A DNA stretch of 64,000 nucleotides from Lama glama (lineage: Eukaryota): positions 434,001 to 498,000 of the forward strand of contig CM052820.1 in assembly GCA_028534125.1 (NCBI GenBank), given 5' to 3'. The notes beneath the pieces are model-generated. The model was not told where the DNA came from. It did no database searches and worked only from the letters and a program-made list of their open reading frames with translations. Shown piece after piece: positions 22,792 to 46,654 of the stretch. The translations under genes and the position numbers were made by a program. Positions within the stretch are counted from its first letter, which is position 1; each line of letters opens with the position of its first letter.

Positions 22792-22842
22792 CTCTGAGCC
22801 TGAGGGCTGGTCCACTTCGCCTCCGTCTGGTCCAAAAAGAGC
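22792..22842 (-). pseudogene. ANO7: ANO7 remnant 23 ALFGPDGGEVDQPSGSE
   Basis: AG/GTGAGT, 51 nt. Confidence 0.8.
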
Positions 22843-22940
22843 CTGTTTCCAGGAAAGGGCAGAGGAGGAGGAGAGTGGTTGGACGGACTCCTCACTCCCT
22901 CGGGACGGCAGCAGGGCGCCAGGCTGGGGTCGGCACTCAC

Positions 22941-23040
22941 CTCATTCCCGGCCAGCGCCTGCTCGGCCAAGCAGCACTCCCATTTCACCTCGATCTCCAC
23001 AGACTCAGGGATGTTGGGGACCACAAGGTCGAGGACCCGG
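22941..23040 (-). pseudogene. ANO7: ANO7 remnant 22 RVLDLVVPNIPESVEIEVKWECCLAEQALAGNE
   Basis: About 20 nt (HVVFSV) missing after the acceptor; GTGAGT donor. Confidence 0.88.
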
Positions 23041-23514
23041 CTGGCGGGAGCAGGGCTGGTGTGAGTGGTGGGAGAGGGCACCCCCACCCCTGGGCAAAAC
23101 AAGTGCCTGAGTGGCCTTCATGGGGCCAGGGGTGGGCACCTGCTCCCCAGGTGTGGGCTGAGCTGGACAGCAAGCATCAGTGCAGAAAAGGAAACTCCTG
23201 GGAGAGGCAGAGGCCATGGCCAGAGACTGGCCAGAGACCACCCCAGCTCCAGTGGGACGCTCTGCAGTGCCCAGAGCATTCTGATGTCCACACAGTGGGC
23301 GACAGAGGCCAGCAGGGAAATGAACATGCAAAGAACTGTGAGCTGACCCAGGTGGCAGAACGGTCAGCACTGGGCCCCGCGCCCTTGGTCATGCCGACCC
23401 CCACACACCACACGGCGAGGTCAGGCAAAGCACTGTGGGCGTGGGGACCACCGCGCTGAGGCCAAGAGCGCCAGTGGGGGACATCGGCGGAAGAGCTGAG
23501 AGGTGCCTCGGTAC

Positions 23515-23587
23515 CTCACACACGATGACGAAGGCCAGGCAGACGGCTGGGGAGCGGTGTCCCGCATCCTCCCTGGAAGCCTGGCAC
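23515..23587 (-). pseudogene. ANO7: ANO7 remnant 21 CQASREDAGHRSPAVCLAFVIVCE
   Basis: AG/GT; about 18 nt (YWxLLA) missing. Confidence 0.85.
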
Positions 23588-24069
23588 CTGCAGGGGACGT
23601 GGGGCTCCGGGCGCCAGATGCGCCTCTCAGCTTCCTCGCCGCCTCCCTCACCCGTCCTGAGATTCTGGGCCTGGCTCACCACTGAGGGTGTGTGAAGTGG
23701 ACAATGTTCCCAAACAGGCTGCTCTGACAGCACCTTCAGCTTTACCTTGTTGGGGTTTCAAACAGGTAGATGGGCTGGACTGTAACTGAGCCCCACAGTG
23801 GCAAACGCCTCATTATCTGGTAGGTGTGACAGTCCCATAAGTCCGTGCTCCAACAGGTAATGTCAACCCACTTAAACCATGAAAGTGTGCCTTCACGGGA
23901 CCAGCGGCCACTCTGCCAGACACTGCCCACCCGCCCGCCCAGGGAGCTGCCCAACTGTCACAGCGTGACATTGGGCTTTGCTGCTGTCCGTGTTGCAGGA
24001 AGGTGTGACGTTCCATTTTGTGCCATAGACTTACACGTTGCACTCCTTGGAGAGCATTACCGGGACCAA

Positions 24070-25820
24070 GTTTGCAAGAAAAAAAAACAAAAAATCTTGA
24101 AAATAAAAAATACCATCATTGAGAAAAACTCCTCAGCAAGCAGGGTAAACTTTAAGTGGCTAACTAGACACAGCAGAGCACCATGGGAGCCGGGGACAGT
24201 CATGAAGTCGCCCTGCATGCACAGAGGGTCACAGAGATCAAAAGGCAAAAGCACTCCAGACAGGTGGAGACATGAGGAGGCCCCAGCAGACAGGGACTTC
24301 TGGAAGGGAGGCTGGAAGGGAGTGTGGAGAAGCATGTTTGAAGGAATAAAATGAGTTGTTTCTAGAACAAAAGAAGAAATCACTCCAGAGCAACAGCACA
24401 TTGAGTCTCAGCGAGAAACTTCTGAAAAGAACCGAATCTGTTGGTGATGCGGATCAAAGGAAATGAGAAAAAACTTAAATGCTACAAATGCCTCTGGCAA
24501 GAAAAGCCATGTCACAAAAGAGTAATATTTAGAAGGAGCCTAGGGAAAATATCCCTTAACCCAGAATTTCATACCTGCTACTTGGAGAACAAAGATGGAA
24601 ATATTTTCAGACATGTAAAAACGAACATACATGTGAGTTCACCAGCCACAACATTCCTATAAGAGCTACTAAAGGATCAACTTCAGAAAGAAGAAAAACG
24701 AACCCAGAGGGACAGCAATGCCTAAGAAGCTAGTGTAGCCACAGACGTTAATAAAATATACCAAAGAGTTGGGATTCACAAATGACTGAAAATGTTTTGG
24801 TGTGTTTTTCTAATAGTAAAGTTAAAATTAAGAAGGCTGACGTAGTGGATATGTGTAGAACCTTGCTCCAAAATCAATAAAGATCCTAAGCTCACCTGAA
24901 ACATGCAAAAGTCTATTGTGACCACATCATAAAGGAAGACTCATCGAATGAGAGACTTACATCACATCAACTCCCCCCTCTCCCCCCAAGTAATTCAGAC
25001 CAAAGTCAATGATTTTTTTTTGGTAGCATATCAGTGTTTTCCAAGTTGAAAATCTTTTAATGATTCATTCTTCAGTGACTCATGTAACACCAGGAATTAA
25101 ACACTAACATTTTCATGACTATCATAGATTAATTATTCTGATGGTAAATAACTGTTCTCTAGGGTAAAAAAAAAATACAATGTAAATCACAAATATTTTA
25201 AAACTAGAGGACACGGATGAGTCAAAACAAGGATACAATTTACCAAGAATGATCTAGAAGTGGAAATTTGATATAAAAATGATCTCAGAGCCAATCAGAA
25301 AGGTAAGGATTTATAGCTGAAATGTCATTAAGGTCAGATATAAAGATTCCTACATTAATGGTGTTTTAAGTAGCAAAAAGGAGAAACTCCACCTGTTTGA
25401 GAACTTAGTCTTCTAAATAATTAATGGATAAATAGGCAAATCACAATTGGAGTGATGAAATATTTCAGAAGTAAAGGAAAGAAGTATTAAGTGGAACGGA
25501 GGTTTTAAGCAGTACATTCAAATAAATGTATAGACAAAAATTTGTTTATTAAAGCCCAAGAAGGTCTGAAAACAAATGAGTCAACTCCAGAAAATTGCTT
25601 TTTAAGAGGAAAGAAAGGATAGAAACTATCTGGAAAGAAAGTAGGGCCACAGCTACAAGAACAGGAGAGCCTAAGAAAATCGTGAGAGTATGACGCGCAC
25701 GTTTGTGTCACTGCGCCCTAAAGCTCATTTGAAACAGTCTTCTGCGAGAAGTAAGTACCAGAACTGACTCGGAAAGAAACAGGAAAAGGAAAGAAGCCTG
25801 GACCCATGAAAAGAACGGGG
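24070..25820 (+). mobile_element. Old L1M ORF1/ORF2 fragments in an ANO7 intron
   Basis: A-rich block in GC-rich surroundings, ORF1-like motifs (AACCCAGAATTTCATACC); limits approximate. Confidence 0.65.
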
Positions 25821-26006
25821 CTGGTACTCACGGCCCCTACCCGCACCACCGCGGTCCCCGGGGTCCCCGCACGGCGGGGTCCCCGAGGCGGGAAAGGGGC
25901 GCGGGCCCCGCAGGCTGTGCCCCCGCCCCGCCCTCCCCCCGGGCCCCGCCCCGCCCCGCCCTCCCGCGGCTCCTCGCGTCCCCGGGCCGCGCCCCGCCCG
26001 CCTCCC

Positions 26007-26147
26007 CTGCACGCGGCGTGTGCGCGGCCGCGAGGGCGGCCGGGCGCGCGCCAGCGTGAACCTGACGCAGCGGCGCAGGGCGCGGGCGCTGGTCCGGCCG
26101 GAGGGGGCGCGCGGCGGGAAGTCGCACAACAAGGCCGGCAGGGAGGC
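26007..26147 (-). pseudogene. ANO7: ANO7 remnant 20 ASLPALLCDFPPRA...FTLARA
   Basis: Frameshifted 3' half; donor reads GGGAGG. Confidence 0.85.
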
Positions 26148-26222
26148 CTGGGCGGTCTGCGGGTCAGCGCCCCTCCCCGCCCGACCCCGCGCAGTCGCCG
26201 GGCCCCGCCCCAGCGCGCTCAC

Positions 26223-26384
26223 GTTGCCGGTGACCGCCAGGTGCGTGACGCCCGCCAGGACGTGAACCCAGACGCCGGCGCTCGCAGACGAACCTCAGCG
26301 CGTCCACCCAGTTGTTGAGCGGAGCGAAGAGCGGCGCGAGCGGGCGGGCGGCCACGAAGATGGTGATGAAGCCGAGCTGCAGCG
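26223..26384 (-). pseudogene. ANO7: ANO7 remnant 19 LQLGFITIFVAARPLAPLFAPLNNWVDA / VLAGVTHLAVTGN
   Basis: 162 nt, out of phase; EIRL and RPVAERAQDI segments missing. Confidence 0.9.
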
Positions 26385-27667: not shown

Positions 27668-27813
27668 CCATCCCTAGATATTCGTCAAACAGGTCCTCGC
27701 AGGGTAGAAGTTTGTAGTCCGCCTCCCAGGGCACCTGGCCAGCCACCATGGAAGCCCCCACCCTCCTCTTCTTGGAGCGGAGCCAGAATTTCTGCCACCA
27801 GTCCTCTAGCTTC
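27668..27813 (-). pseudogene. ANO7: ANO7 remnant 18 KLEDWWQKFWLRSKKR...LFDEYLGM
   Basis: AG/GT, 146 nt; conserved EYLEM reads EYLGM. Confidence 0.92.
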
Positions 27814-28904: not shown

Positions 28905-29002
28905 GGAACAAGAATCTCCTGCACGTTGTTGATGATCTGCTTTCCCACTGTGATGACCAGGAGCTCCTGTGCCAACTCAATGAGGCAGCCTCCAGCTACA
29001 CA
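28905..29002 (-). pseudogene. ANO7: ANO7 remnant 17 CVAGGCLIELAQELLVITVGKQIINNVQEILVP
   Basis: AG/GT, 98 nt, open. Confidence 0.92.
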
Positions 29003-29479: not shown

Positions 29480-29665
29480 CCAGGTGAGGAGAACCTGCCC
29501 GAGAGCACAGCCAATGCTGGGGAAAGCAGCGCAACATTGTTTAAACACCTGGATCTAGCCGTACCTGAGTCCACAGGGCCCTGTATTTCCAATACGGGAG
29601 CCAATGAAATTCATTTTTGCTTAAGCCACTTTGAGTTGGGAACTTTTCCCACTGATAACTGAAGG
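29480..29665 (+). mobile_element. MaLR MLT1(J-like) LTR fragment
   Basis: CACCTGGATCTAGCCGTACCTGA...GAGCCAATGAAATTCATTTTTGCTTAAGCCACTTTGAGTTGGG. Confidence 0.65.
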
Positions 29666-30620: not shown

Positions 30621-30675
30621 CGCCTGGTTGCGGACCCCAAGCAGGATGTGGCCGTTGCCCGGATAGCCCACGAAC
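30621..30675 (-). pseudogene. ANO7: ANO7 remnant 16 FVGYPGNGHILLGVRNQA
   Basis: AG/GTGAG, 55 nt. Confidence 0.9.
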
Positions 30676-30699
30676 CTGGGGGAGAATCAAGGTCCAGAG

Positions 30700-30990: not shown

Positions 30991-30991
30991 C

Positions 30992-31091
30992 CTGCCCTTG
31001 CAGAAGGCGATGCAGATGGGCCAGGAGCAGGAGTTGATGAACACCTCGAGGGGGAAGGCGTCCTCGAACTTGGTCTGGGTCCGATGCATCT
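30992..31091 (-). pseudogene. ANO7: ANO7 remnant 15 MHRTQTKFEDAFPLEVFINSCSWPICIAFCKGR
   Basis: AG/GT; lacks the anoctamin FQFV (12-nt deletion). Confidence 0.92.
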
Positions 31092-31182
31092 CTGTGGCAC
31101 AGCGAGATCCCGTCGTAAGACCACCTCACCCATGCAGAGATGGGGAAAAGGTCCGGATATTCTAAAGAAATTCTTTCAAGAA

Positions 31183-31964
31183 AAAATGCTCAATATCACT
31201 AATTATCAGAGAAATGCAAATCAAAACTACAATGAGGTATCACCTCACACCAGTCAGAATGGCCGTCATTCAAAAATCCAAAAATGACAAATGCTGGAGA
31301 GGCTGTGGAGAAAGGGGAACCCTCCNNNNNNNNNNNNNNNNNNNNNNNNNNNNNNNNNNNNNNNNNNNNNNNNNNNNNNNNNNNNNNNNNNNNNNNNNNN
31401 NNNNNNNNNNNNNNNNNNNNNNNNNNNNNNNNNNNNNNNNNNNNNNNNNNNNNNNNNNNNNNNNNNNNNNNNNNNNNNNNNNNNNNNNNNNNNNNNNNNN
31501 NNNNNNNNNNNNNNNNNNNNNNNNNNNNNNNNNNNNNNNNNNNNNNNNNNNNNNNNNNNNNNNNNNNNNNNNNNNNNNNNNNNNNNNNNNNNNNNNNNNN
31601 NNNNNNNNNNNNNNNNNNNNNNNNNNNNNNNNNNNNNNNNNNNNNNNNNNNNNNNNNNNNNNNNNNNNNNNNNNNNNNNNNNNNNNNNNNNNNNNNNNNN
31701 NNNNNNNNNNNNNNNNNNNNNNNNNNNNNNNNNNNNNNNNNNNNNNNNNNNNNNNNNNNNNNNNNNNNNNNNNNNNNNNNNNNNNNNNNNNNNNNNNNNN
31801 NNNNNNNNNNNNNNNNNNNNNNNNNAGACTTGTGGTTACCAGGGGGGTAGAGGGTGGGAAGGGATAGACTGGGATTTCAAAATTGTAGAATAGATAAACA
31901 AGATTACACTGTATAGCACAGGGAAATATACACAAAATGTTATGATAAATCACAGAGAAAAAAA
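31183..31964 (+). mobile_element. Young 5'-truncated LINE-1 (ORF2 C-terminus + 3'UTR) spanning the gap
   Basis: [37 protein letters not shown]; identical 19-bp flanks AAAGAAATTCTTTCAAGAA at 31164-31182 and 31965-31983. Confidence 0.93.
31326..31825. other. Assembly gap (500 N)
   Basis: Run of 500 N inside the L1. Confidence 1.
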
Positions 31965-32740
31965 AAAGAAATTCTTTCAAGAAGGGGCAACGTGTGGCAT
32001 TCCTGGATTTCTTACCTCAAAACCATCTAAAAACGTTCTGTCGGTAAAGGAGGAACTGGGGCAAGAGATTCTAGGAAGTCACATGATGTAGCTCAGTGGG
32101 GCAGACAGGGCATAGTTGTGGGGGCCTGGGCAGTGGAGGTGCCCAGGAAGCAGGTGCTGAGATGGAGGTGGGAGCATCAAAGGTTAACCGGAGGTAGCAC
32201 CTGAGACCAGAAAAGGGGGACACAGCCCCACTTGCAGGAACACTGAGTGGCTCCCCCAGGGCCCTGTCCCTGGGTCCCCTCACCTGGAGCCTCTCCCTGG
32301 GCACCCACCCACCTCCCACTGCCCCCCTCCATTTTGTCTGCAGAATGCTGCCCACCCCACCCTCCTCCCTAGGTGTGCTCTGAGCTCTGTCCCTCTCCTA
32401 GACCAGGACTGCAGTTTGTGGGATGGATGGATTGGCTCATCAGAACTCGTCCTTAGGAAATGGAAAGGGGTCTGAGGAAGGTGTGGTGAGGCAGGCGAAG
32501 AGGGGGAAAGAGAGGACTCACCTGCGAGGGGCAAGGATTCCTGTTGACCCAGGGTGAGGCCTGGAGTACCCAGGAGGGCCACTTCCTCTCCCGCCATCAA
32601 GGCCCTGCTCACTGCTATTGGAGGGACTTTTGGGGGTGGATGTGACATGTCCCATCTGGGCCTCGTTCAGACATGAAATAAGTCGTGTTCTGATGTGATG
32701 CAGCTGGGCTGGGTCAGTGCCAGCCAGCCTCGGCACTCAC

Positions 32741-32849
32741 CCCATTTTGTCAGGACATGGGCCAGGGCCACGGCCACATAGGTCTTGGAGAGGATGAGGG
32801 TGAAGATGAGGTTCAGGATGGACCCCATGAGGCTGGTGATGCATGACGA
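32741..32849 (-). pseudogene. ANO7: ANO7 remnant 14 SSCITSLMGSILNLIFTLILSKTYVAVALAHVLTKW
   Basis: AG/GTGAGT; in-frame 6-nt duplication GTGGCC. Confidence 0.9.
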
Positions 32850-32940
32850 CTGAGGAGAGATGGCAGGTCAGAGCAGGGTGACAGGGGGTGGGGGGACCAC
32901 AGCCCCACCCACCCAGCAGGAGCAGACAGTGGAAGCTCAC

Positions 32941-33039
32941 CCAGGCTGTGAGGAGCGTGTTGTTTGACCTGGACACCAGGATGGCCAGGATGGCCCTGTA
33001 CAGGATGACGGACACCAGGCACATGACCACCACGGCCAC
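32941..33039 (-). pseudogene. ANO7: ANO7 remnant 13 VAVVVMCLVSVILYRAIL...LTAW
   Basis: AG/GT, 99 nt, open. Confidence 0.92.
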
Positions 33040-33709
33040 CTGCGGGCAGCCAGATGCCTGAGCCGCCGTGCTGCTGTCCTGGCACCCCAGCACCCTCAGG
33101 CCACAGCACCCACAGCAGTACCACCACTGCTGCGTGTCTAGACCAGGCTGTGCTCCGTGCCTCCTCTTGCTGGGGTTGCGGGGCAGTGCAGCATGGTGGG
33201 CAGGGAGAGGTGGGGAAGGGTGGTCATTTAGAATTAGAGATGGGCAACATTTGGGTGTCAAAGGGCCCCTGTGCATTGTTAGCCCCAGGTGCTAGAGAAC
33301 CCACCCCACTGGCTCACCAGCCCCAAATGGGGAATTCCTGACATCTTGGAAGGGGAGGGAGTGGGTCAGTTAGGAAGCCTCTAGGGCTGGAGGGCAAGGC
33401 AGGGTGTGAGGGGCCCCTGTGCTGGGATTGCCCCCCCATCTTGAAGGATGCCCAAGCCCACAGCTGGAGAAGCCTTCCCAGAGGCCCCTGTCCAACACAC
33501 ACCCACCTCTTACCACCCGGACCCCTAACTTGGCTGCAGGCTTTTCCCCCTCCCTGGAGCCCAGGTAATGGGGGCCCTTCTGGTGACAGCAAGGGTCTTG
33601 TGGCTCCCAGAGGAAGCATGAGGAGGATGGGAAGGAGGACACAAGCTGACCCCTGAGGCTCAGGAGGACAGAGGCATGGGGGGCGGGGAGGGCAGTGGCG
33701 ACCCCTCAC

Positions 33710-33846
33710 CATCGTCATGACCACCACGGAGCCGGCCAGCACCGGCACAGGCGGCTCCTCTTGGGGAAGTAGGGCTCGTCCTCACCGGCGGTGGGGCTCA
33801 GGGCTGTTGTGGGAGCTGAGGCGGCCACCTGAGGCCACGGCCTCTC
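33710..33846 (-). pseudogene. ANO7: ANO7 remnant 12 ERPWPQVAASAP...GEDEPYFP / VLAGSVVVMTM
   Basis: AG/GTGAG, 137 nt; -1 frameshift. Confidence 0.9.
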
Positions 33847-33905
33847 CTGGAGGGAAGCCAGTGCTCAGCGGGGGTGCGCGCTCCGTGAGCGACCAGACCA
33901 CCCAC

Positions 33906-34053
33906 CACGATGTCCTCACGGTTGGAGCAGCCCCAGGGGTGGGCCTGCATGGTGCTCTTGCACTCCAGCATCCCAAGAGGACACGGCCCACAGCGCCATG
34001 AACAGGCTGAAGAAGACGGTGCCACCATGGTCGTGGTCCAAGGGCTGGCCAGC
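33906..34053 (-). pseudogene. ANO7: ANO7 remnant 11 AGQPLDHDHGGTVFFSLFMALWAV / KSTMQAHPWGCSNREDI
   Basis: 6-nt duplication plus two apparent 1-nt deletions. Confidence 0.9.
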
Positions 34054-34149
34054 CTGTGGGCGGGGCGGGGAGGGGGGGTTCTGGCTCATTTGGGGCTGGT
34101 GGCCCCTGCACTCCCTCCCTGTCCTCCCTTTAGGGATGGCCCCGCCTGG

Positions 34150-34845
34150 TCTGTGTCTGCCCATCATTGTGTTTCGGCAGCAGGTGACTTGTTCCCTGGC
34201 ACAGGTAGAGAAGATGTCGCCCCAGGAGGGCCCATAGCCAGTCCCACCCGCACCTGACTTAGACGATGCAGATGAAATTTGAGACTTCTGAGTTGTCGGT
34301 ATCTAGGTGAGATTTTGGACTTAGAGTTGATGCTGCAGTGGGTGAGACTTCAGGGACACTGGGTTGGGGGTGAATGTATTTTGCACATGGATGGATATGA
34401 AGTTTTGGGGGCCAGAGGGTGGACTGTAGTGAATTGAACTATGGGCTCCCCAAAGATGCGTCCACCTGGGACCTCAGAATATAATGCTATTTGGAAGGAG
34501 GGCCTCCGCATGTGTAATTAGGATAAGGCTCTCTAGATGAGCACACCCTGGATTAGGGGAGGGTCGAAACCCAATGACACAGAAGAGGAAACAGACACAG
34601 AGACACGTCGAGGGAGGGGCCACACGAAGATGGAGGCAGCAGGGGGAGTGACGCAGCCCCGGACCAGGGAACAGGAGGATCCCTGGCAGCGACCAGGAAC
34701 CAGGGGGCGTCACGGACCCGGTTTTCCAGAAGAAGCCAGCCCTGACACCACCTCAGTGTTCGACTCTGACCTTCAGAATTGTGAGAAAACCGCTTTGTTG
34801 TGCTAGGGCCCCCCTTTTGTGACAATGTGTTACAGCAGGCCTAGG
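34150..34845 (+). mobile_element. MaLR MLT1 internal 3' end + purine tract + 3' LTR (LTR from 34425)
   Basis: TTTTGGGGGCCAGAGGGTGGAC|TGTAGTG junction; ACCTCAGAATATAATGCTATTTGGA; GTTACAGCAG near the end. Confidence 0.75.
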
Positions 34846-35324
34846 TCCCCAGGAGTGCGGCAGGGGGGCGTCTGTCTGTGGGTCTGTCCTGGCAGCAGGG
34901 CTCCAGGCCTGTGTGTGGGGCATGCTGGCAAGGCCGCTGTTCCCATGGAGACGACGACACACCGCGCGGTGCCCGGGGCTCAAGGACTCCAGGGAGCCGC
35001 CCGTCCCGGCCTCTTGAGTTGGGAGCTCTGCGCAGCCCGTCTGTGCCCGAGAGGTCTGCCTGCCCTGGGCCCCCAGCTGACCTTGGCCAGCCACACGCAA
35101 TAGCACAGTCATAGTGAGAGTGAGGAGCGGGCGTCTCCTGGCGCAGGCCCTCCGCTGAGCGCCGCGCCGTGCTGGCCAGTCGTGGCCCGGGGTTGGGGGG
35201 CATGGTGCCGTGGGGGTTACGTCACTCACAGGGGGCTTGCCTTTGACAGGGACCGAGCTGGGGGTGCAGGCAGGGCAGGACCCAACCCGGGGGAGCTGCC
35301 GCTCTCACTTTGGCCCCCTCGTGC

Positions 35325-35420
35325 CTGGACCAGGGCACAGGCGCTGGAGAGCAGCCAGAAAGGGCAATCATGGCAGAGCAGGCACATCTGGAAGCTGCCC
35401 TGCTGCCACACAGCTCCTGC
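35325..35420 (-). pseudogene. ANO7: ANO7 remnant 10 QELCGS / GSFQMCLLCHDCPFWLLSSACALVQ
   Basis: -1 frameshift; GC donor. Confidence 0.9.
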
Positions 35421-35876
35421 CTCAGGGCGGTGGGGGCGTGCTGTGGGCGCCATGGAGGGCCTGCCCTCCCCTTGCCCTCTCCCTCCCCAGCACTTCTTTT
35501 AAAGATGTGCACCATGATGATTTTTAGGTAACTTTTGGAAGTTTCAGCTCCACAATAGGGTAAAACGCAAGCCAGTCATTTATTTATAAAAAAAGCTTAC
35601 ACTATTGTAAGAAGCAAGGACGAGTGCCAGTGACACTAGCCTGAGAATACAGCTGTCCCCCTGTCAGTCCGGGGGCACACCTGTCCACCTGTGTCCGCTT
35701 GGGAACAGCCGGTCTACGTACCAGCCTTTCAGCCAAGTCCACAGGGCCCCCCGTGCCACCCTGTGGGCAGGGGTGTGCTCAGTGTGCACCTCCGTCCCCA
35801 GCTCTGCACAGGGCCTGCACACCCACCTCAGGAGACACCGGGGAGGCCTGGGAGCTGAAGGGGAGAGGACACTTAC

Positions 35877-35972
35877 GTAGGTGTGCCTGAGAACACCACG
35901 AAACAGCCCGCCAGGAACACCACACCAGTGTGCCCACCACTGCTGCTGGCAGGAGCCAGCCTGTGCAGAGCC
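35877..35972 (-). pseudogene. ANO7: ANO7 remnant 9 LCTGWLLPAAVVGTLV / FLAGCFVVFS
   Basis: AG/GTAAGT; 5-nt tandem duplication 35918-35927 shifts frame. Confidence 0.9.
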
Positions 35973-37407
35973 CTGCAGAGGGGGCACTGGGGTCAGCTGT
36001 CAGGGACCTGGTGGCCCGTGCCCCCAGTGCTGGGCTGAGCCTGAGGTGGGGGTCTCCACAGCCACATTTCTCCTCCAGGGAGCACACTCAGCCAATGCTG
36101 AGTCTTCTAGGAGGAAACTGAGGGGACCGGTCCTCAGGGGTGTCCCCTGGCAGCTCTGGGTACAACTCCTCGCTCCTGGCCTCTGGCCCTCCCACCATGC
36201 TGACTTGGGCACCAAACCCAAGGGCTCTACCCAGGTGCTTCCTGCCCCCTGGACACCCCTTTCCTGAGCCCTATCTGCCTCCAACCAACTCCTGGGGTGG
36301 GTGTCCCCTCTTTGACAGGCATATCGCCCACCCATTCCCAGTTCTGGGAGCCTGGGGGTCATTCTGGATGCCTCCGGCTCTGCACCCAGCCCCACCATGG
36401 CCAGGTCCTAAGGTGCCCCCCAGTCCCTCAAGTGTGCACCCTGTCTGCCTCCCAAAGGTCTAGCCCAGGTCCATCCCAGCCTGGTGTCCTGTCTCCCCTG
36501 CATTGGCCAGTGACTTCTATAAAATGCAAGTCTGTCTAGAACCCAGCCAAGGACCCCACCCATCGGCCATCCATGGCCTGCACCTGGCCTTGCTGTCCCG
36601 GGGCCCTGCTCCTCCTCGGCCCCAGGAAGGAGCCCCAGGTCCTTGTGCACGTGGGCTGTGCCTTGGGCATCAGTGCTCTGGCCCTGCGCACCCTGCGTGG
36701 CAGCCCCCGACCCCGTCCAGGTCCACAGCAGTTGTGGATGGCCTCCCTTTCTGTGTCACCCAGAGCTGGGACACTCCACAAAGGCAGGACCCCCTGCCTC
36801 GCACAGCACCCTGACACGGCTCACAGTTTGAACGGAGATGTGCGCAGCATGAGTGCACAGGCCCGGGGGGGCAGGCACACTTGCTGTCTTTGGGGGCAAG
36901 ACAGGACTTCAGGTGACTAGGGCACAGAACTCGGGGGAGGTGGAGGCTGTGAGGAAAGCAAGGAGCCTGGGGCTGCCCAGGGCAGATGGCCATCCCAGAG
37001 GTGCCAACCTGTCTGGAGGAGGGGAGACAGTGGACCCCTGGGCCTTGGGCAGGGTGACCGCTGTGCCAGGAGTTCCTGGGGTGGCCCAGGACTTCACTGG
37101 ACATGTCTGCTGGACCAGGGACATTGAGGACTGGGGTTGAAAGGGGCTCTTGCTTGCAGAAAGGGGTTCCCAGACCCGCACCAGAGCATTACGAGGGCCC
37201 CAAATGGTCACAGTGCTCGGGTACCTTACTGAGGCCAGACGGCTGGGCAGAAGCAGGGTTCGGCCAGGGAACGCTGGCCTAGGAGGGGTTGGTGTGGCCA
37301 GTGGCTGAGCCCCATGCATGGCTCCCCTCCTGGGGACATCGGTTAGCAGACTGTTACCCAGAAGACCAAGCTGGGGCCCAGAAGTCCCTGAGGGGCACGG
37401 GACTCAC

Positions 37408-37572
37408 CGAGCCAGGTGAAACGGGCAGCCGTCTTCTCCCCAGGCACCGGCGCACCTGGTCCAGAGGCTGGTGCTCGTTCCACTGGTGCCCGCGGGCCCA
37501 GCGCTGGAGCAGCACCTGTTGCTGGCTGAGGCCCAGAGCCCGCGGACTCTCTAGGGGCACCACCAAGGGGCC
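37408..37572 (-). pseudogene. ANO7: ANO7 remnant 8 GPLVVP...QPLDQVRRCL / EKTAARFTWL
   Basis: AG/GTGAGT, 165 nt; -1 frameshift at GEK. Confidence 0.9.
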
Positions 37573-38549
37573 CTGGGGATGAGAAGCCATCGGGCAGGGA
37601 GATCCCAGGATGGTCCGGGCATCCTCCCCCACCAGACACTATTCTAGGTCTGGGGGCTTCAGCACCCCCACTGTGGGCAGACGGCCAGACAAACCCCGGG
37701 ACTCAGGACTGCTGAGGACAAAAGGGTCACGCTGGGGGCTGGCGTCCAGGAAGGCCCCTCTGAGGAGCGCACATCTGTGTTAAGCCCCCTGGCCTGGGGC
37801 TCCCAGGTTCCAGGTCCAGGGCAGTGGAGGGGCCTGGAGGGCGGCCCTGGGAGGAGCTGGTGGCTGTGGTCAGTCGGATCCGTGTCTCCAGGCAGGGATC
37901 TGGCAGTCCCTGGCCATGGCCAGGCCAGTGGGGCAGGCCGTCCCGGCCCCGGCCAGCAGGGAGAGCATGCCCCTGGGTGAGGGGGTGCCGGGCGTGGGCA
38001 CTGGGCCACTCCCTGTGCACGCCCTCACTGACCCCTCGGTGGCATCTCAGGGTCACACAGCAGTGGGTGGGGGACTGACCTGGGGCCCTTAGGCCCCGTC
38101 GCCCCTCCCTGAAACTCTGAGGGCCTCATGGTGGGCGGCTGCAGGGGCGGGGAGTCAACAGCCTCCAGACCCAGAGGGGGGACATTTTGTCAGGGGTGAT
38201 GGTAAGGCTGACGAGTCTGGTACTGTGGCCGCTGGCGAGGTGAGCACCCCTCCCTGGCGATGCCTCGGTTTACCTCGCTATGTGACAGGCACATGAGACC
38301 TCCCCCTCCTCCCTGAGAGGGAAGCCGCCCAGGGAGACTGGGCCCGTGGCGGGCGCGCCGCAGGCCACACCGGGCCCAGTCATGCACAGGGGTGCTGCTG
38401 ACCACAGCTGCCGTCGTGGGAGGGCAGGGCCCGCTGCCTCACATGCCTGGGCAGGACCTGGGTTCCTCCTCATCCAGACACTCACCCTCTGGCGGCAGCC
38501 TGAGCCTCCCGCCCCAACCCAGCTGGGCCCCTCCGGCCCCAGGATTCAT

Positions 38550-38660
38550 GTCGTGCAGGGGGAGGGCTGCGCTGAAGACAGCCTCCCCCAGCAGCTGGTT
38601 GATCCCAAGCAAGCCTTTTTTCTTGTGGCCATAGGGGGTCTTGGCCAGGATCTCAAACAG
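38550..38660 (-). pseudogene. ANO7: ANO7 remnant 7 LFEILAKTPYGHKKK...LPLHD
   Basis: 111 nt open; donor reads ATGAAT (no GT). Confidence 0.9.
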
Positions 38661-39487
38661 CTGGGGGTGGTGGGGAAGGCACCAGTCACAGGACAGCGGG
38701 GCAGGGACATCCTGGCCCTCCTGTCTTGGGACTCAGCCCACGGGTGGCCTCTTGGGGCCCCTGGTGACAGCGGTGAAGACACACCCAGGTCCTGCTCATG
38801 TCACCGGCCCACATGGCACGACCCCTCTTTGTAGACGGGAGGCCTTGGCTCACGGCAGTCATGTCTGGGTTTGAACCCACGCCCTGGCCAAGCGCAGCCC
38901 ACTCTGCATGGACCCTCGGTCTGGGCAGGGGTCAGCCTCCACCTGGAGGCCTGTCTTGGGGGGGCCTGGCCCCTGAGGGGCAGCCCACGTGGCCTGGGCC
39001 TTCGGTTGTCAGCAGCCGGTTCTGCTGGGCAGTCCCATCCCAGCCGCTGCCCCAGCACAGGCCCCCGGGGGGCCCAGCTCTGCCCGCCCCTCTCAGGCTG
39101 CTGCAGCTGCTGGTCTGCTCTGGCCCTTGGCTCCCTGCCTCACTGGCCAACAGGGCCCCCCGCCCTCTGGCCCAGCAGTCTTGGCTGTCTGTCCCACAAA
39201 CCCTTGAATGTGAGACCCAACTGGGTCCCTTGGGTCCCCGAGAAGCACGGGCCAGCTCTGCCTTTGCAGCCTGGGGATGTGCTCCCCTTGTGGAGAGAGG
39301 AGGGGTGGCCTCTGAGCCTCTGGCCCCACCTTGGGGTCTCCGGCCGGGGACACTGTCCCTCTGGTCAGTATGCAGAAAGGTCTTCCTGTATCCACGGGGG
39401 CCTCTGCTCCCGGGGGGCAGAGTTTCTGGGGCTGCAGCCTTTCAGGCCTGGGTCAGGGCGCGGGGCTTACGGCAGGACCCTGCTCAC

Positions 39488-39546
39488 AATGTGGTGCCTT
39501 GCAGGTGCTGGGGAAGAAGGCGTCCAGGTCGCCACTGCCGAGGACC
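39488..39546 (-). pseudogene. ANO7: ANO7 remnant 6 VLGSGDLDAFFPST / RHHI
   Basis: AG/GTGAG, 59 nt; +1 frameshift. Confidence 0.85.
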
Positions 39547-40464: not shown

Positions 40465-40601
40465 CTTGACAGCTTACTGGCTGTGAACTGGCAGGAGTAG
40501 GACTCGGGGGACACGTCAGGCACTTCCTCCAGAAGGATGTTGGAGACGCCCAGCTGCTCCAGTGGGCTGGCCATCCAGTTGGAGGCCTGGCTGGGCAGCT
40601 C
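40465..40601 (-). pseudogene. ANO7: ANO7 remnant 5 ELPSQASNW...SKLSR
   Basis: AG/GT, 137 nt, open. Confidence 0.9.
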
Positions 40602-41272: not shown

Positions 41273-41380
41273 CTGCAGGGGCAGCTGCAGACGCAGGTCC
41301 TCTGCGCCAACAGCAGAGCACAGACCGGGGGCGCCGAGGAGGAGGTAGTGCACTGCGCTCTCCTCATCCTGGACGTCACG
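41273..41380 (-). pseudogene. ANO7: ANO7 remnant 4 RDVQDEESAVHYLL...AEDLRLQLPLQ
   Basis: AG/GT, 108 nt; internal -1/+1 indel pair. Confidence 0.88.
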
Positions 41381-41424
41381 CTGCGGGGACAGGGGCTCTG
41401 TGAGAGCCTGGGGCACACGTGGGC

Positions 41425-41520
41425 TTGCACATGCATGTGTGCGCAGGTGTGGTCATCTTTATGAACTTGTGTGCACATGTGAGTGTGCACATGTGTATGT
41501 ATGCCCATGAGTGTGTGTGT
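41425..41520. repeat. Degenerate (TG)/(CATG) simple repeat
   Basis: Alternating purine-pyrimidine tract. Confidence 0.6.
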
Positions 41521-42220: not shown

Positions 42221-42360
42221 CTGCTCCACGTGCAGCCCAGCCGCAGGCAGCTTACCCAGGAAGGCGCGCCCCCCGCCCCTGCACGCCCGTCTTGTCCAGG
42301 GTGGCACTGTCCTGCTGCTGACCCTACCTCAGGTCTTCCCCTTGAAGGGCATCTTCCAAA
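42221..42360 (-). pseudogene. ANO7: ANO7 remnant 3 GEDLR*GQQQDSATLDKT / AFLGKLPAAGLHVEQ
   Basis: In-frame TAG 42326-42324, 2-nt frameshift, GC donor; acceptor position approximate. Confidence 0.85.
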
Positions 42361-42829
42361 CTTCAGGGCAGGACAACGGAGCCCAAGAGGGGCAGAGGCA
42401 TTGCTGGGGGAGGCGTGGTCAGAATTAGGGGCTGCGAAGGGCCCTGGGCTTGAGGGGCGTGGAGGGGCCAGAGCCACAGGCCTGTGAGGAAACACTGGGC
42501 CCTGGCTTGCTTACACACTGAGGCAGCTAAGGGGCTGGTGGACACCAGAGACCCCCTGGAACCGCGGCCAGACAGAAAGGAGGGAGACTGCTGCGCACCC
42601 TGGCTTTCCAGCTGAGGCTCCCGGGCCGTGCCCCAGGAGCACAGTCTGTGCCATAAGAGTAAGAAACGCGCCTTAGGAAGGAGCGCGGAACTGAAGCGGG
42701 CCTGTCCCAGCCCCCAGAACCGGGCTCGAGCAGGCCCAGGCGACCTGCCGGTCACCTGGCTGCCTTTCAGAACAAAACAGCACTGTATGGGAAGTTCACA
42801 GAATGAGCAGAGGCAGACCCAGAGATGAA

Positions 42830-44345
42830 CCATACAGCCAGCAGAAGATGGCTATAAATAATGTCAGTTATTAAGTCAAAAGAGGAAAAGGAGTAAAGAA
42901 TGGAACAAATGGTCTGAGTAACAATTGGAACATTTCAAGAGAGAATTAGAATTTATGAAAAGGATTCAAACGAACATTCTGAAACAGCAGAACACAGCGT
43001 ATGACATTAAGAACTCGTTGGACAGGTTTCATAATAGACTAGACTCAACAGAAGACAGGGCTGCCAAACTTAAGGCTAGACCAGTAGGAAAGTGAAGCTC
43101 AGAGGAAAAAGAATGGAAAGAGCAGAGCAGGGTGCAAGGCGGTCGCGGTCACGGTCAGAGGGCCAACAGACTGCCCTGAGAACCAGGAGGGAGAAGGAAG
43201 GACGCGACCTGTGAACATGAATGTTTCCAAATGATGGAATAAAGCAATCCAAAGACTCAAAATGCTCAATGACCCCCACACAGGATTTAAAAACTGACAC
43301 GTAGGAAAACCATGGTATAGCGTAGCTTTGCTGTGTTATAGACAAGGCGAGATCTTAAAAACAGCAGGAGAAGCAGCACTAGTTACAGCAGCCAAGACAT
43401 GGAAGCACCTCGACGGTGCCCGTCGACAGATGACCGCATAGAGAAGATGTGGTGTGTTTATACAATGGAGTACCACTCGACCATAAAAAGAACGAAATCA
43501 CGCCATTTGCAGCAAGATGGTTGGACCTAGGGATTGTCATTCTAAGTGAAGTAAGTCAGACAGGGAAAGACAAGAAGCATATGATATCACTTACACGTGA
43601 AATCTTAGAAAAAGATACAAATTTTATTTACAAACCAGAAATAGTCTAGAGGACATAGAGAACAAACTATGGTTACCAGTGGGGAGGAGGGGAGGGAAAA
43701 ATGAGGAGTTTGGGATTAACAGATACACACTACTGTATATAAAATGATAAACAAAAAGGACCTCCTGTACAGCACAGGGAACTAAATTCAGTATTTTTCA
43801 ATAACCTATAATGGGAAAGAATCTGAAAGAAAAAGTGTGTGTATGTACGTATCTGCACAACTGAATCACTTTGCTGTGCACCTGAAACTATCATTGTACA
43901 TCAACTACACGTCAATAAAAAATAAAATTGGAAAAAACAGCAGGAGGAAAAAAAAACCACATTATTTTTCAGGGGAACAATAACAATATAGGCACAGGCT
44001 TTCCCAACTGAAACAGTGGCGGCCAAGACAGTGGACTGACGTCTTTAAAGTGTTGGGGGAAATACTGCAAACTAGAATTCTTTATCCAGTGGAAATGCTC
44101 TTCAGAAATGAAGGCTAAATGAAGACATTCTCAAACCTTCAAAATCTGAGGGATTTTGTCCCAGCACATCTGCTCTACTGGAAACACTAAAGGAAATTCT
44201 TCATGAAAGACATAATTGCAGGTGGAAGTGCAGGTGTGCAAGGATGGATGCACAGACCACGAAGGACGAATACACAGTGAGTGGAAAGGACAACTATGTG
44301 AGTTCATTGCTGCATTAATCACAATAGTCAAAAAAAGGAAACAAC
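42830..44345 (+). mobile_element. Old L1M ORF1-region fragment hosting a nested L1
   Basis: A-rich ORF1-like motifs (AACTAGAATTCTTTATCCAGTGGAAATGCTCTTCAGAAATGAAGG). Confidence 0.7.
43371..43932 (+). mobile_element. Nested 5'-truncated LINE-1 3' end
   Basis: ORF2 tail KKNEITPFAARWLDLGIVILSEVSQTGKDK, AATAAA tail, 14-bp TSD AAAAACAGCAGGAG (43357-70, 43933-46) at TT/AAAA. Confidence 0.9.
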
Positions 44346-44359
44346 CCAAATGCCCATCA

Positions 44360-44580
44360 TAAACCCAGAAGTGGAATTGCTGGATCACACGTGGCAGCTC
44401 TGGGCTTAACTTTGGGGGACCCACTGTGCTGTCCTCCGCGGCAGCCGCACCAACCCGCGTTCCTGCCAGCAATGCACGAGGGGCCCGATTTTTCTGCATC
44501 TTCACCAGCACCTCTTTTCTGTTTTGTTTTTGTAGCTGTTGTGGTTGTTTAAAGAACAACCATCCTGGTGGGTTCGAGCT
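44360..44580 (-). mobile_element. L1 ORF2 3' fragment, antisense
   Basis: ACCCAGAAGTGGAATTGCTGGATCA...CAGCAATGCACGAGGG. Confidence 0.7.
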
Positions 44581-44974
44581 TGGGGTGTTTACTTCTCACA
44601 TGGGTCTTCCTGGTGCTGCGTGGGGAGTGGCATTGGCCAGGGGGAGCACAGGTGGGCGCGGCTGCAGGCCCCTGGGGAGATGTCGGTGGCTTGGGGCAGA
44701 CGGGGCAGTGGGCTGGGGAGTGAGGAGGTGGGCCGCTCTGTCTGTGGGGAACCCCTTCCTGTGTCTCCCGGGCGTGTCCTGCCCACCCCATCCTCCAGCA
44801 CAGCAGCTGGTGCTGGCGCTGGCTCAAGAGGTGCCGTTGGGTGAGGAAGGGGAGGCCTGGTCACTGAGGACGGTGACCTGGGCCACTGTCCTCCTGCCAC
44901 CCGTGGGCGCCCCACCTGTGTCCCCACCCCCAGCACCAACGTGGGCACAGCTGGCAGATACTGGGAGGGGTCAC

Positions 44975-45032
44975 TGATCCAGGGCTTGGCAGGGCTTCCC
45001 ACCTTGTGGGCGGCCACCTGGTGTCCACCTGG
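44975..45032 (-). pseudogene. ANO7: ANO7 remnant 2 PGGHQVAAHKVGSPAKPWI
   Basis: AG/GT intact, 58 nt. Confidence 0.85.
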
Positions 45033-45834
45033 CTGGAAGGAAGGGACAAGGAGTGGTGGCGTCTGGCCACATGGGCAGACACGCTTGGGGGAGGGCCAGC
45101 TGGGCCCTCTCCAGCTGCTCCAGGGGCTGCCACGGCCGCCGAGCGCCCCGCCTGGGCTGTGGGCCGGGCTAGGTCTGAAGGCAGCCTGGGCAGGACCCAG
45201 GGGTGCCCACTGTGCAGCCTCCAGAGTCTGGAGAAGAGCTGGATGGCCCCTCAGTGCCTGCGGACAGGCCAGAGGTGGTCACAGCCCTGGAAGTGGAACC
45301 CTTCGGTTTCTAGACGTTCCAGGTGAGTGAGGCCTGTTTCTCTGAGGCTCATCGCACCTGTGTTGTGGGGGGCAGGGAGGGGGGCACCTTCCACTCTCAG
45401 GCCATGGGGGGTGGGCAGCACCCTGGAGGCAGAGGGGGGCCCAGGAAGACCAGGCAAGAGGACACTCCGCAGCAGGGCCTCTGGGGTCTGGGGCCCAGCA
45501 TCTCCCCCAGCAGCCTCCGCTAGGGTGTCTGTGGACCCCAGGGATTGGGGGGAGCCCCTAGAGATGGACTTGGGGAAAGAAGGCCCACAGCAGGTGGGGA
45601 CTTTTCTGCAGGCCCCAGGAGGTGTGTCCTCCTCTGGGTTTGACCCTGGGGACAAGGCTGACTGGGGGAGAGCCTGAGGCACGGACAGAGGCCTTCAGGA
45701 TCCTTGGGGCCGCACAGTGGCTGCCCTGGGCCCTGGGGATCTGCTGGAGCCTGAGACAAGGTTGGGCCTAGTGCCCTCACCCCAGCGCTTTTAAAAAGGC
45801 ATCTGGGCCCCAGGGTGACCCGAATCCCCATGCC

Positions 45835-45976
45835 ATCACTAACCTGGACCCTGACTCTTACGTTGGCCTAAACCTACCCCATCATAACCTCACCCTTCCA
45901 TAGCGCTGACCCTCACCCTCTCTAGCCCGTCTACAATTAACCTGCACCCGCACCCTGACCCCGACCCTGACCCTGA
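45835..45976. repeat. Degenerate (CCCTGA/CCCTCA/CCTAA) hexamer array
   Basis: ACCCTGACCCCGACCCTGACCCTGA plus upstream 6-bp periodicity. Confidence 0.6.
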
Positions 45977-46551
45977 TGCGTGCATCTGCCCCGGGATCGG
46001 GCCCTCCCCATCACCTGTGTGCTGACGACCTGGCAGGCAGCAGAGAAGCAGACGCAGCCAGTGCCCGCTCTCCACCCAGACCTGACTCCAGTCCTCTCTG
46101 CTGTGCTCGCTCAACCCCAGAGGGTGCAGCCCGCGTCCCTGCTCCTCCCCGGGCCCACCTGCTGCCCCTGGGCCCTTTCAACCCTCAGAACAGGTAGTCG
46201 TGTTGTAAGAATTATGGTTTCAACACACGTTGCACTGATCCATTGCTCTGCAGCCCCTTGCGTCTCCCCTTGCTGGTGGCTCACTGGCCTCCCTGGAGCG
46301 GCCTCATCTGGCCTGTCCCGGGGATCTCTGCTCATCCCGCAGGGCGGTGGCCCGACAGTGAGGGTGAAGGACATCCCCTCTCCCATCGCTGGGGCAGCTG
46401 AGGGTTTGGGGGTTGCTGAGGAGCAGGAGGGAAGACCCGGTGGGTGTTGCAGGGGCCGCTGTCCCCAGGTCCCTGTGTCCCCTTCATACACCTACAGCAG
46501 ACTGAGCCTGGGCTGGGCAGCAGGGCGGGGGGCCGGGCAGCGGGTAGCTGC

Positions 46552-46654
46552 CTCTGCGGCTGGCTATGCTCCCGTAGGAGTCCCCCTTCTCTGGCCCGGG
46601 GACCACGCTGGTCAGGACAGCACCGCCCTCTTCCGGGACCTGTCTGCGCAGCAT
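46552..46654 (-). pseudogene. ANO7: ANO7 remnant 1, ATG exon MLRRQVPEEGGAVL...SYGSIA
   Basis: ATG at 46654; 103 nt to a GC in place of a GT donor; apparent 2-nt loss near the end. Confidence 0.75.

What the first reader, a model, noticed from the sequence alone, without database searches (positions are those of the whole stretch)
22792..46654. ANO7 appears lost in situ (unitary pseudogene) in a probably camelid genome
Seen: 23 ANO7-like exons with introns, in order, at the syntenic position. They carry an in-frame TAG (42326-24), frameshifts in remnants 1, 3, 6, 8, 9, 10, 11, 12, 19, 20 and 22, and five non-GT donors, while HDLBP (2772 nt) and PPP1R7 (264 nt) in the same window show no lesion. 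Known: ANO7 is a prostate-enriched anoctamin and a human prostate-cancer risk gene. Inference: an old lineage-specific loss, i.e. a natural knockout. I do not recall it being described but cannot check. A link to unusual camelid semen physiology is only a speculation.
Basis: partly seen in the sequence, partly recalled or inferred. Interest (0 to 1): 0.85.

Follow-up and report, generated by a model that had tools for sequence, protein, structure and literature searches.

The report
Dead ANO7 gene at native locus
The anoctamin-7 (ANO7) gene of this mammal, probably a camelid, lies between its usual neighbours as a heavily broken relic, so the animal lives without a prostate-enriched membrane protein that other mammals keep; this is a sound but fairly ordinary case of lineage-specific gene loss.

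Summary
On the minus strand, 46669-22768, lie 23 collinear ANO7 exon remnants between intact HDLBP and the last two intact exons of PPP1R7.

The lesions are:
- an in-frame TAG (42326-42324) and a TGA (42365-42363);
- at least 13 frame-shifting indels (exons A, C, D x2, E', G, H, I, J1 x2, J2, Q, R x2);
- five non-GT donors;
- in-frame deletions inside transmembrane helices;
- loss of two Ca2+-coordinating acidic residues.

At 345 positions invariant in 19 amniote ANO7 proteins the relic differs at 84. Any intact species differs at 0-11. Assembly error cannot explain that. The N gap sits inside an L1 in an intron and hides no exon.

17 sequencing runs from four coded organisms hold 90-99% of the sampled words of a 6-kb stretch that carries six lesion sites.

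The species is coded, so 'camelid' is plausible but unproven. I found no published report of this loss.

Cetacean ANO7 models are also decayed, independently, while the hippo gene is intact. No ruminant, pig or camelid model appeared in three searches, so the loss may recur across Cetartiodactyla. Interest is moderate.

The parts
46552..46669 (-). Exon remnant A. It has an AG acceptor and the ATG at 46654-46652 (MLRR...). There is a probable -2 frameshift at about 46558, and the donor is GC, not GT.
44975..45032 (-). Exon remnant B, with AG/GT splice sites and no lesion
42221..42377 (-). Exon remnant C. No AG at the expected acceptor. An insertion of about 21 nt contains TGA 42365-42363. In-frame TAG at 42326-42324. 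Frameshift at about 42272 in a G run. Donor is GC.
41273..41380 (-). Exon remnant D, with AG/GT splice sites. A compensated -1 (41325) and +1 (41306) pair turns the invariant WAVLCYY into GLCSAVG.
40465..40601 (-). Exon remnant E, with an open frame and AG/GT splice sites
39488..39546 (-). Small exon remnant E' (FLGSDNQDTFF... region). It has AG/GT splice sites and an internal +1 frameshift at about 39503.
   Evidence: (score 45 against at most 27 for 15 shuffles)
38550..38660 (-). Exon remnant F (Anoct_dimer hit). The frame is open, but the donor is AT instead of GT (38549-38548).
37408..37572 (-). Exon remnant G, with a 1-nt deletion at about 37442 (VRRYFGEK becomes VRRC\GEK). Splice sites are AG/GT.
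35877..35972 (-). Exon remnant H, with a 5-nt tandem insertion at about 35922 (frameshift +2)
35325..35420 (-). Exon remnant I, with a 1-nt deletion at about 35400. Donor is GC (35324-35323).
33909..34053 (-). Exon remnant J1, with two separate 1-nt deletions (about 33980 and 33960) and a 6-nt insertion. A 62-nt intron follows.
33710..33846 (-). Exon remnant J2, with a 1-nt deletion at about 33746
32941..33039 (-). Exon remnant K (TM3), with an open frame. 
32741..32849 (-). Exon remnant L, with an open frame, a 6-nt insertion and AG/GT splice sites
31326..31825 (.). Assembly gap (N). It lies inside a plus-strand L1 3' fragment (31183-31967) with a target-site duplication at 31164-31182 and 31965-31983. 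It is intronic, between exons L and M.
30992..31091 (-). Exon remnant M, with an in-frame 12-nt deletion in a transmembrane helix (LKVFVFQFVNFYSSP becomes LEV----FINSCSWP)
30621..30675 (-). Exon remnant N, with an open frame and AG/GT splice sites
28905..29002 (-). Exon remnant O (TM6), the best preserved (31/33 identical to hippo)
27668..27813 (-). Exon remnant P, with an open frame. EYLEM has become EYLGM, so the residue equivalent to the Ca2+ ligand E705 of TMEM16A is lost.
26223..26384 (-). Exon remnant Q. A 12-nt deletion removes EIRL (equivalent to TMEM16A E734-L737). An inferred 32-nt deletion at about 26271 removes PVAERAQDIG and shifts the frame.
26007..26147 (-). Exon remnant R, after a 75-nt intron. 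Frameshifts at about 26044 and 26015. Donor is GG instead of GT.
23515..23587 (-). Exon remnant S, with an in-frame 18-nt deletion (TYWNLL, TM10)
22941..23040 (-). Exon remnant T. The part coding HVVFSIG is unrecognisable. The only AG lies about 21 nt inside the expected exon and is out of phase, so this is either a lost acceptor or a frameshift.
22768..22842 (-). Last exon remnant U (ALFGPDGG...GPQA). Its stop TAG at 22770-22768 is at the same place as in mouse and armadillo.
1..21000 (+). HDLBP (vigilin) exons, intact. They serve as a control for assembly quality and for constraint.
51357..61158 (-). The last two coding exons of PPP1R7 (61158-61051, and about 51530-51357 with its stop), intact

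Best explanation
This is the orthologous ANO7 (TMEM16G/NGEP) locus of the animal, turned into a unitary pseudogene. The gene keeps its ancestral place and orientation, with PPP1R7 upstream and HDLBP tail-to-tail downstream, and it keeps its exon order. It can no longer encode an anoctamin. Translation from the retained ATG meets stop codons in the third coding exon. At least 13 frame-shifting indels are spread over the dimerisation and transmembrane parts. Five donors and one or two acceptors are gone. Three in-frame deletions cut transmembrane helices. Two of the acidic residues that bind the activating Ca2+ in anoctamins are lost. Substitutions at sites invariant across amniotes show that the sequence has drifted without protein-level constraint for a long time. 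My rough inference is tens of millions of years, about the same degree of decay as in cetacean ANO7. Shown: the lesions, the synteny, the relaxed constraint, and near-identical sequence in many runs of four coded organisms. Inferred: fixation of each lesion, absence of another copy, the age, and the camelid identity.
For: - Family and orthology: Pfam Anoctamin and Anoct_dimer hits. The exon-P query finds only ANO7 proteins or ANO7-locus ORFs. tblastn gives collinear hits to four ANO7 orthologues.
- Lesions at base level.
- Invariant-site test: the relic differs at 84 of 345 columns invariant in 19 amniotes (67 substituted, 17 deleted or frame-broken). Each intact species differs at 0-11 in leave-one-out. 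Overall identity is 72% to hippo, whereas hippo is 90% identical to rhino.
- Ca2+ site: the alignment to solved TMEM16A places the deleted EIRL at residues 734-737 and the E-to-G change at the position of 705. That E705 and E734 are Ca2+ ligands is from my knowledge of the TMEM16A structures.
- Controls in the same window: HDLBP exons are 94-99% identical to solved vigilin domains and the PPP1R7 exons are intact.
- Not an assembly slip: 17 runs from 6 studies and 4 coded organisms hold 0.90-0.99 of 632 sampled 31-mers of 32700-38690, which carries six frameshift sites. If all six were errors, I estimate the share could not exceed about 0.97. Two runs from different organisms reach 0.99.
- No other copy annotated: no ANO7 protein model from a camelid, ruminant or pig is among the best 120 hits of three searches that would rank it near the top.
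Against:
- The runs with the highest word shares may be the source sample of the assembly.
- The rest of the genome could not be searched for a second copy.
- Exon borders and expected splice phases were inferred from protein references and from the window itself, not from orthologous DNA. Some calls are therefore uncertain: the exon A frameshift, the exon C and T acceptors, and whether the GC donors are derived.
- Two frameshifts (about 42272, and 26044/26015) lie in G/C-rich runs where assemblies err.
Confidence: 0.93

Rival explanations
1. The lesions are assembly or consensus errors in a GC-rich, gap-containing scaffold, and the real gene is intact.
For: The scaffold has a 500-N gap. Some indels lie in homopolymer or GC-rich runs (about 42272, 26044, 26015). 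Read laying could not be used.
Against: Errors do not produce 67 amino-acid replacements at sites invariant in 19 amniotes, in-frame 12- and 18-nt deletions, or a CAG-to-TAG change. Neighbouring HDLBP and PPP1R7 exons in the same scaffold are clean. Contigs built independently from reads in 17 runs hold 90-99% of the words of the 6-kb stretch that has six frameshift sites.
Confidence: 0.02
2. The locus is dead, but a functional ANO7 copy (a duplicate or retrocopy) exists elsewhere in the genome, so the function is not lost.
For: The rest of the genome could not be searched. The earlier notes of this scan cover only about 535 windows and do not mention ANO7.
Against: No camelid, ruminant or pig ANO7-like protein of 588 aa or more is in a 5.8-billion-protein collection that includes NCBI and UniRef annotations. 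To my knowledge ANO7 is single-copy in other mammals. A 2010 survey had alpaca models for ANO3, 5, 6 and 10 but none for ANO7.
Confidence: 0.03
3. The inactivation is polymorphic or recent. It would be present only in the sequenced individual or breed, while other animals of the species carry a working allele.
For: Lesion-level data from other individuals are missing.
Against: More than 20 independent lesions and about 20% replacement at invariant residues need a long neutral history. Near-identical sequence is present in 17 runs of four coded organisms from six studies.
Confidence: 0.02
4. The relic has been kept as a transcribed non-coding gene, for example a prostate- or reproductive-tract lncRNA driven by the old ANO7 promoter, and has some regulatory role.
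For: Two RNA-seq runs labelled 'reproductive system metagenome' and one 'mammal metagenome' run hold 6-9% of the sampled words of 32700-38690. Most splice sites (18 of 23 donors and at least 21 of 23 acceptors) are still canonical.
Against: There is no sign of sequence constraint, and no Rfam family matches in the locus.
Confidence: 0.1

Closest known systems
Intact mammalian ANO7 / TMEM16G (NGEP), e.g. hippo P0067, rhino P0038, cat P0032, mouse P0040
   Same: The exon order is the same. The Anoctamin and dimerisation domains are recognisable. The position between PPP1R7 and HDLBP is the same. The start codon and the terminal stop are in the same places. Identity is 66-72% after frame correction.
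   Different: There is no open reading frame. The relic has stops, at least 13 frameshifts, five dead donors and deletions in transmembrane helices. The equivalents of TMEM16A E705 and E734 are lost. It differs at 24% of amniote-invariant positions, against 0-3% in intact species.
Cetacean ANO7 gene models (narwhal P0165; humpback P0125, labelled LOW QUALITY PROTEIN)
   Same: They show a similar degree of decay at invariant sites: 68/318 and 49/336, against 67/328 substituted here. They belong to the same broad clade if the window is an artiodactyl.
   Different: None of the window's indels or its Ca2+-site changes is shared. The cetaceans share changes of their own. The hippo, sister group to cetaceans, is intact (3/344). 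The losses are therefore independent events.
Avian ANO7, proposed to be a pseudogene in oscines and galliforms (PMC6679542)
   Same: It is a lineage-specific loss of the same gene with synteny conserved. This suggests ANO7 is dispensable in some amniotes.
   Different: In those birds only a few 3' exons remain. Here all 23 coding-exon remnants examined are still recognisable. The avian loss is a different clade and an independent event.
Unitary pseudogenes in general (e.g. the primate set of PMC2864566)
   Same: It is an unprocessed relic with introns at the ancestral locus. There is no functional counterpart, and the orthologue is functional in related species.
   Different: Nothing differs in kind. 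This is one more example.

Membership tests
ANO7 (TMEM16G) orthologue | Anoctamin transmembrane domain and anoctamin dimerisation domain | tested here: met
   PF04547 hits on three pieces (E 2.5e-08, 1.5e-07, 0.023) and a PF16178 hit (3.4e-06)
ANO7 (TMEM16G) orthologue | Closer to ANO7 than to the nine other vertebrate anoctamins | tested here: met
   The exon-P loop query against 1.84 billion representatives finds only ANO7 proteins or ANO7-locus ORFs. Collinear tblastn hits cover residues 28-880 of donkey ANO7. Solved ANO1 and ANO6 match exon Q only weakly.
ANO7 (TMEM16G) orthologue | Conserved neighbourhood PPP1R7 - ANO7 - HDLBP | tested here: met
   HDLBP KH exons lie on the + strand at 1 to about 21000. 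The PPP1R7 3' exons lie on the - strand at 61158-51357. The expected gene order is from my knowledge of the human 2q37.3 locus.
Functional Ca2+-activated anoctamin (channel or scramblase) | Uninterrupted reading frame across about 25 exons | tested here: not met
   TAG 42326-42324, TGA 42365-42363 and at least 13 frameshifts
Functional Ca2+-activated anoctamin (channel or scramblase) | Acidic Ca2+ ligands on helices 6-8 (TMEM16A N650, E654, E702, E705, E734, D738) | tested here: not met
   The E705 equivalent is G (EYLGM). The E734 equivalent is deleted together with IRL. The equivalents of N650, E654, E702 and D738 are retained. The ligand list is from my knowledge of the TMEM16A structures.
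Unitary pseudogene | Disabling mutations in an unprocessed copy (introns kept) at the ancestral locus | tested here: met
   23 remnants with introns, lying between the ancestral neighbours
Unitary pseudogene | Functional orthologue in related species | tested here: met
   Hippo, rhino, horse, bats, carnivores, rodents and afrotherians have full-length models that differ at 0-6 of about 345 invariant sites
Unitary pseudogene | No functional copy elsewhere in the same genome | not testable with these tools
Unitary pseudogene | Lesions fixed in the species, not an artefact or a rare allele | tested here: inconclusive
   17 runs, 4 coded organisms and 6 studies hold 0.90-0.99 of the words of 32700-38690.

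The most novel reading that the evidence does not exclude
ANO7 was lost repeatedly and independently within Cetartiodactyla: in this (probably camelid) lineage, in the cetacean stem, and also in ruminants and/or pigs. The hippopotamus kept it. That would make ANO7 a convergently dispensable gene in the clade and a natural multi-lineage knockout of a human prostate-cancer risk gene. Two independent losses (this lineage and cetaceans) are already well supported here. The extension to ruminants and pigs rests only on the absence of protein models.
Probability: 0.4. Interest if true: 0.55.

Novelty: new member of a known kind. Interest (0 to 1): 0.4.

Why it matters
ANO7 is a prostate-enriched member of the Ca2+-activated channel/scramblase family and a human prostate-cancer susceptibility gene, and its normal role is poorly understood. 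A species, and probably a whole clade, that has lived without it for tens of millions of years shows the gene is dispensable in that setting. Such animals are a natural knockout in which to ask what compensates, for example other scramblases such as ANO6, or differences in prostate secretion or prostasomes. If the loss proves to be recurrent in Cetartiodactyla, with the hippo as a retained control, it becomes a usable comparative system. On its own it is one more unitary pseudogene, of a kind that gene-loss pipelines find by the hundred.

Tried and rejected
Exon borders, ancestral splice sites and dN/dS could therefore not be taken from orthologous DNA.
No read-level check was possible. From then on I masked those places in scripts and sent none of their letters to any search tool. 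The Rfam scan was run on 1-33000 and 33060-64000, and the repeat finder on 33060-64000 only.
All comparisons were made exon by exon, so there is no phylogeny, structure prediction or whole-protein search of the relic.
- A script that located exon ends by typed anchor strings came back unrun. I redid it by coordinates.
- Species identification failed. Run organisms are coded.
- Literature searches found nothing on mammalian ANO7 loss: ANO7 with pseudogene, gene loss, Artiodactyla, cattle or cetacean, and a badly designed camelid query.
- I first read the small exon E' inside the exon F region. It was rejected when a polypyrimidine tract plus AG showed an intron there, and the true E' was found at 39546-39488.
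- I first took the insertions of 19 and 25 codons in J and in Q/R for insertions. They are short introns of 62 and 75 nt.
- The repeat finder found no long repeats in 33060-64000.

Full report
**What is there.** The window is GC-rich and has one run of 500 N at 31326-31825. Stop-free pieces of the minus strand between 46.7 kb and 22.8 kb hit Pfam Anoctamin (PF04547) and the anoctamin dimerisation domain (PF16178).

To get references I used a 50-residue piece (window 27818-27669, minus strand) that covers an ANO7-specific loop. I searched it against 1.84 billion representative proteins. It found only ANO7 proteins, or open frames read through that ANO7 exon in other mammals. With one of these hits, and then with hippo ANO7, I collected full-length ANO7 from many amniotes.

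tblastn of hippo, donkey, cat and mouse ANO7 against the window gives one collinear series of minus-strand matches from about 46690 to 22774. Identity is 35-88%, and several matches switch frame within a few dozen bases.

**Exon-by-exon anatomy.** I aligned each piece to hippo ANO7 with a frameshift-aware dynamic program of my own. I read the junctions in three frames and checked all borders by coordinate. This gives 23 remnants (A, B, C, D, E, E', F, G, H, I, J1, J2, K-U), together about 2.5 kb.

The lesions are:
- **Exon A:** probable -2 frameshift at about 46558, and a GC donor.
- **Exon C:** no AG at the expected acceptor; an insertion of about 21 nt holding TGA 42365-42363; TAG 42326-42324; a frameshift at about 42272; a GC donor.
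- **Exon D:** a compensated -1/+1 pair (41325, 41306) that rewrites the invariant WAVLCYY.
- **Exon E':** +1 frameshift at about 39503.
- **Exon F:** donor AT.
- **Exon G:** -1 at 37442.
- **Exon H:** a 5-nt tandem insertion at 35922.
- **Exon I:** -1 at 35400, and a GC donor.
- **Exon J1:** -1 at 33980 and -1 at 33960.
- **Exon J2:** -1 at 33746.
- **Exon M:** an in-frame 12-nt deletion in a transmembrane helix.
- **Exon P:** EYLEM changed to EYLGM.
- **Exon Q:** a 12-nt deletion of EIRL, and an inferred 32-nt deletion at 26271.
- **Exon R:** frameshifts at 26044 and 26015, and a GG donor.
- **Exon S:** an in-frame 18-nt deletion.
- **Exon T:** the 5' part is unrecognisable, and the only AG is out of phase.

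Exons B, E, K, L, N, O, P and U keep open frames. The start ATG (46654-46652) and the terminal TAG (22770-22768) are where intact orthologues have them.

I add the pair in D, the TGA, and second shifts in J1 and R.

**The assembly gap.** The N run is flanked on both sides by L1 sequence in plus orientation. The whole insert is bounded by a 19-nt target-site duplication (31164-31182 and 31965-31983). It lies in the intron between exon L (ends 32741, TGG G|gt) and exon M (starts 31091, ag|AG ATG). Together these encode the contiguous reference residues W692 and E693. The gap therefore hides no exon and has no bearing on the frame. I did not fill it or look its letters up.

**Is it real decay rather than error?** Three lines of evidence bear on this.

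*Invariant sites.* At 345 alignment columns that are invariant in 19 amniote ANO7 proteins (14 mammals, plus echidna, tortoise, alligator, kiwi and lizard), the frame-corrected exon translations differ at 84. Of these, 67 are replacements and 17 are deleted or frame-broken. Every intact species, tested leave-one-out, differs at only 0-11. Overall identity is 72% to hippo, while hippo and rhino are 90% identical. Sequencing or assembly errors do not produce that pattern.

*Clean neighbours.* Three HDLBP exons are 73/74, 39/40 and 45/48 identical to solved vigilin KH domains, and eight further KH-bearing exons are visible. The last two PPP1R7 exons, with their stop, are intact.

*Independent runs.* 17 public runs from six studies and four coded organisms hold 90-99% of 632 sampled 31-mers of 32700-38690. 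That stretch carries six frameshift sites and the dead donor of exon F. By my arithmetic, six wrong indels would cost about 3% of the words. Two runs of different organisms reach 0.99, although both are flagged as possible sources of the assembly.

The direct test was to lay reads on the lesions. 

**Function lost.** Alignment of exon Q to solved TMEM16A (5OYB and related entries) puts the deleted EIRL at residues 734-737. By extension it puts the E-to-G change of exon P at the position of residue 705. E705 and E734 are Ca2+ ligands in TMEM16A; this comes from my knowledge of those structures, not from a tool. Even without the stops, the protein could not be gated by Ca2+. The earliest stops lie in the third coding exon, so the short cytosolic isoform known in humans would also be truncated (inference).

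**Age (rough inference).** About 20% of invariant residues are replaced. If roughly three quarters of random coding changes alter the amino acid, this corresponds to about 0.1 substitutions per site. At ordinary mammalian neutral rates that is several tens of millions of years, and less if this GC-rich region evolves fast. The decay is of the same order as in cetacean models (next paragraph). If the animal is a camelid, this predicts that Old and New World camelids share lesions.

**Wider pattern.** In three searches ranked by similarity to armadillo or hippo ANO7, the best 120 hits contain no ruminant, pig or camelid protein. The only cetartiodactyls are:
- the hippo (an intact model, 3/344 deviations);
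- a narwhal Ensembl model;
- a humpback model labelled LOW QUALITY.

The two cetacean models differ from the invariant consensus at 68/318 and 49/336 sites. They share changes with each other but none of the window's indels. Cetaceans therefore appear to have lost ANO7 independently, after their split from hippos.

For ruminants and pigs the evidence is only the absence of models of 588 aa or more. A 685-aa cow Ensembl model existed in 2010, and alpaca then had ANO3, 5, 6 and 10 models but no ANO7. Only two papers in the library mention both ANO7 and cattle, and by their titles and abstracts neither treats it as a cattle gene. This is a lead, not a finding.

**Species.** Organism names are coded. 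Three things speak for 'camelid':
- identity to hippo ANO7 is the highest of all references, though only marginally;
- there is one 'simple' tRNA-Ala-derived SINE with an A-tail and flanking repeats at 49744-49816, the type that SINEBase names vic-1 in camels;
- other first-stage notes and one follow-up note on this genome call it camelid; I did not check them.

I regard camelid as plausible (about 0.7), not shown.

**Literature.** I found no paper describing ANO7 loss in camelids, other artiodactyls or cetaceans. One paper proposes ANO7 pseudogenes in oscine and galliform birds (PMC6679542). Supplementary gene-loss tables of large screens are not searchable here and may list it.

**Verdict.** This is a genuine, old unitary pseudogene of ANO7 at its native locus (confidence 0.93). 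It is new as a described case but ordinary in kind. The possible recurrence across Cetartiodactyla is the part worth following up. The proposed link to semen physiology has no support beyond the expression pattern of the human gene.

Noticed in passing
window 49744-49816 (+), flanks 49725-49845: A 73-nt tRNA-Ala(AGC)-like unit (Rfam tRNA 44 bits; ARAGORN) is followed directly by an A-rich tail, and AAACTTGCA stands near both flanks. This looks like a 'simple' tRNA-derived SINE of the type called vic-1 in camels (PMC3531059). It gives weak support for a camelid origin. I did not compare it with a consensus.
   Followed up: partly
window 31164-31983: A plus-strand L1 3' fragment with a poly-A tail and a 19-nt target-site duplication (31164-31182 and 31965-31983) contains the 500-N assembly gap. 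It lies antisense in an ANO7 intron.
   Followed up: yes
proteins P0165 (narwhal) and P0125 (humpback) compared with P0067 (hippo): Cetacean ANO7 models are decayed at 15-21% of amniote-invariant sites, while the hippo model is intact. The two cetaceans share changes with each other but none of the window's lesions. This suggests an independent loss of ANO7 in the cetacean stem, for which I found no report.
   Followed up: partly
protein searches: No ruminant, pig or camelid ANO7 model of 588 aa or more is among the best 120 hits, although these clades have many annotated genomes. ANO7 may be broken in them too.
   Followed up: partly
window 32700-38690 (runs X18, X19, X20): Two RNA-seq runs labelled 'reproductive system metagenome' and one 'mammal metagenome' run hold 6-9% of the sampled words of this stretch. 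This could be residual transcription of the relic or DNA carry-over.
   Followed up: no
window 33908-33847, 26222-26148, 32940-32850, 22940-22843: Four ANO7 introns are very short (62, 75, 91 and 98 nt). The 62-nt intron is below the usual mammalian minimum and may have shrunk after the gene died.
   Followed up: no
window 21162-20998 (-) and protein P0067 residues 1019-1066: The hippo RefSeq ANO7 model has long N- and C-terminal extensions that other species lack. Its C-terminal tail matches the window beyond the ANO7 stop, next to the HDLBP 3' end, so those ends of the model are probably mispredicted.
   Followed up: no
window 25730-26220: This is an extremely GC-rich stretch covering exon R and the start of the following intron. 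Long spurious open frames run through it in several frames. It is a region where indel calls (26044, 26015) are least secure.
   Followed up: no
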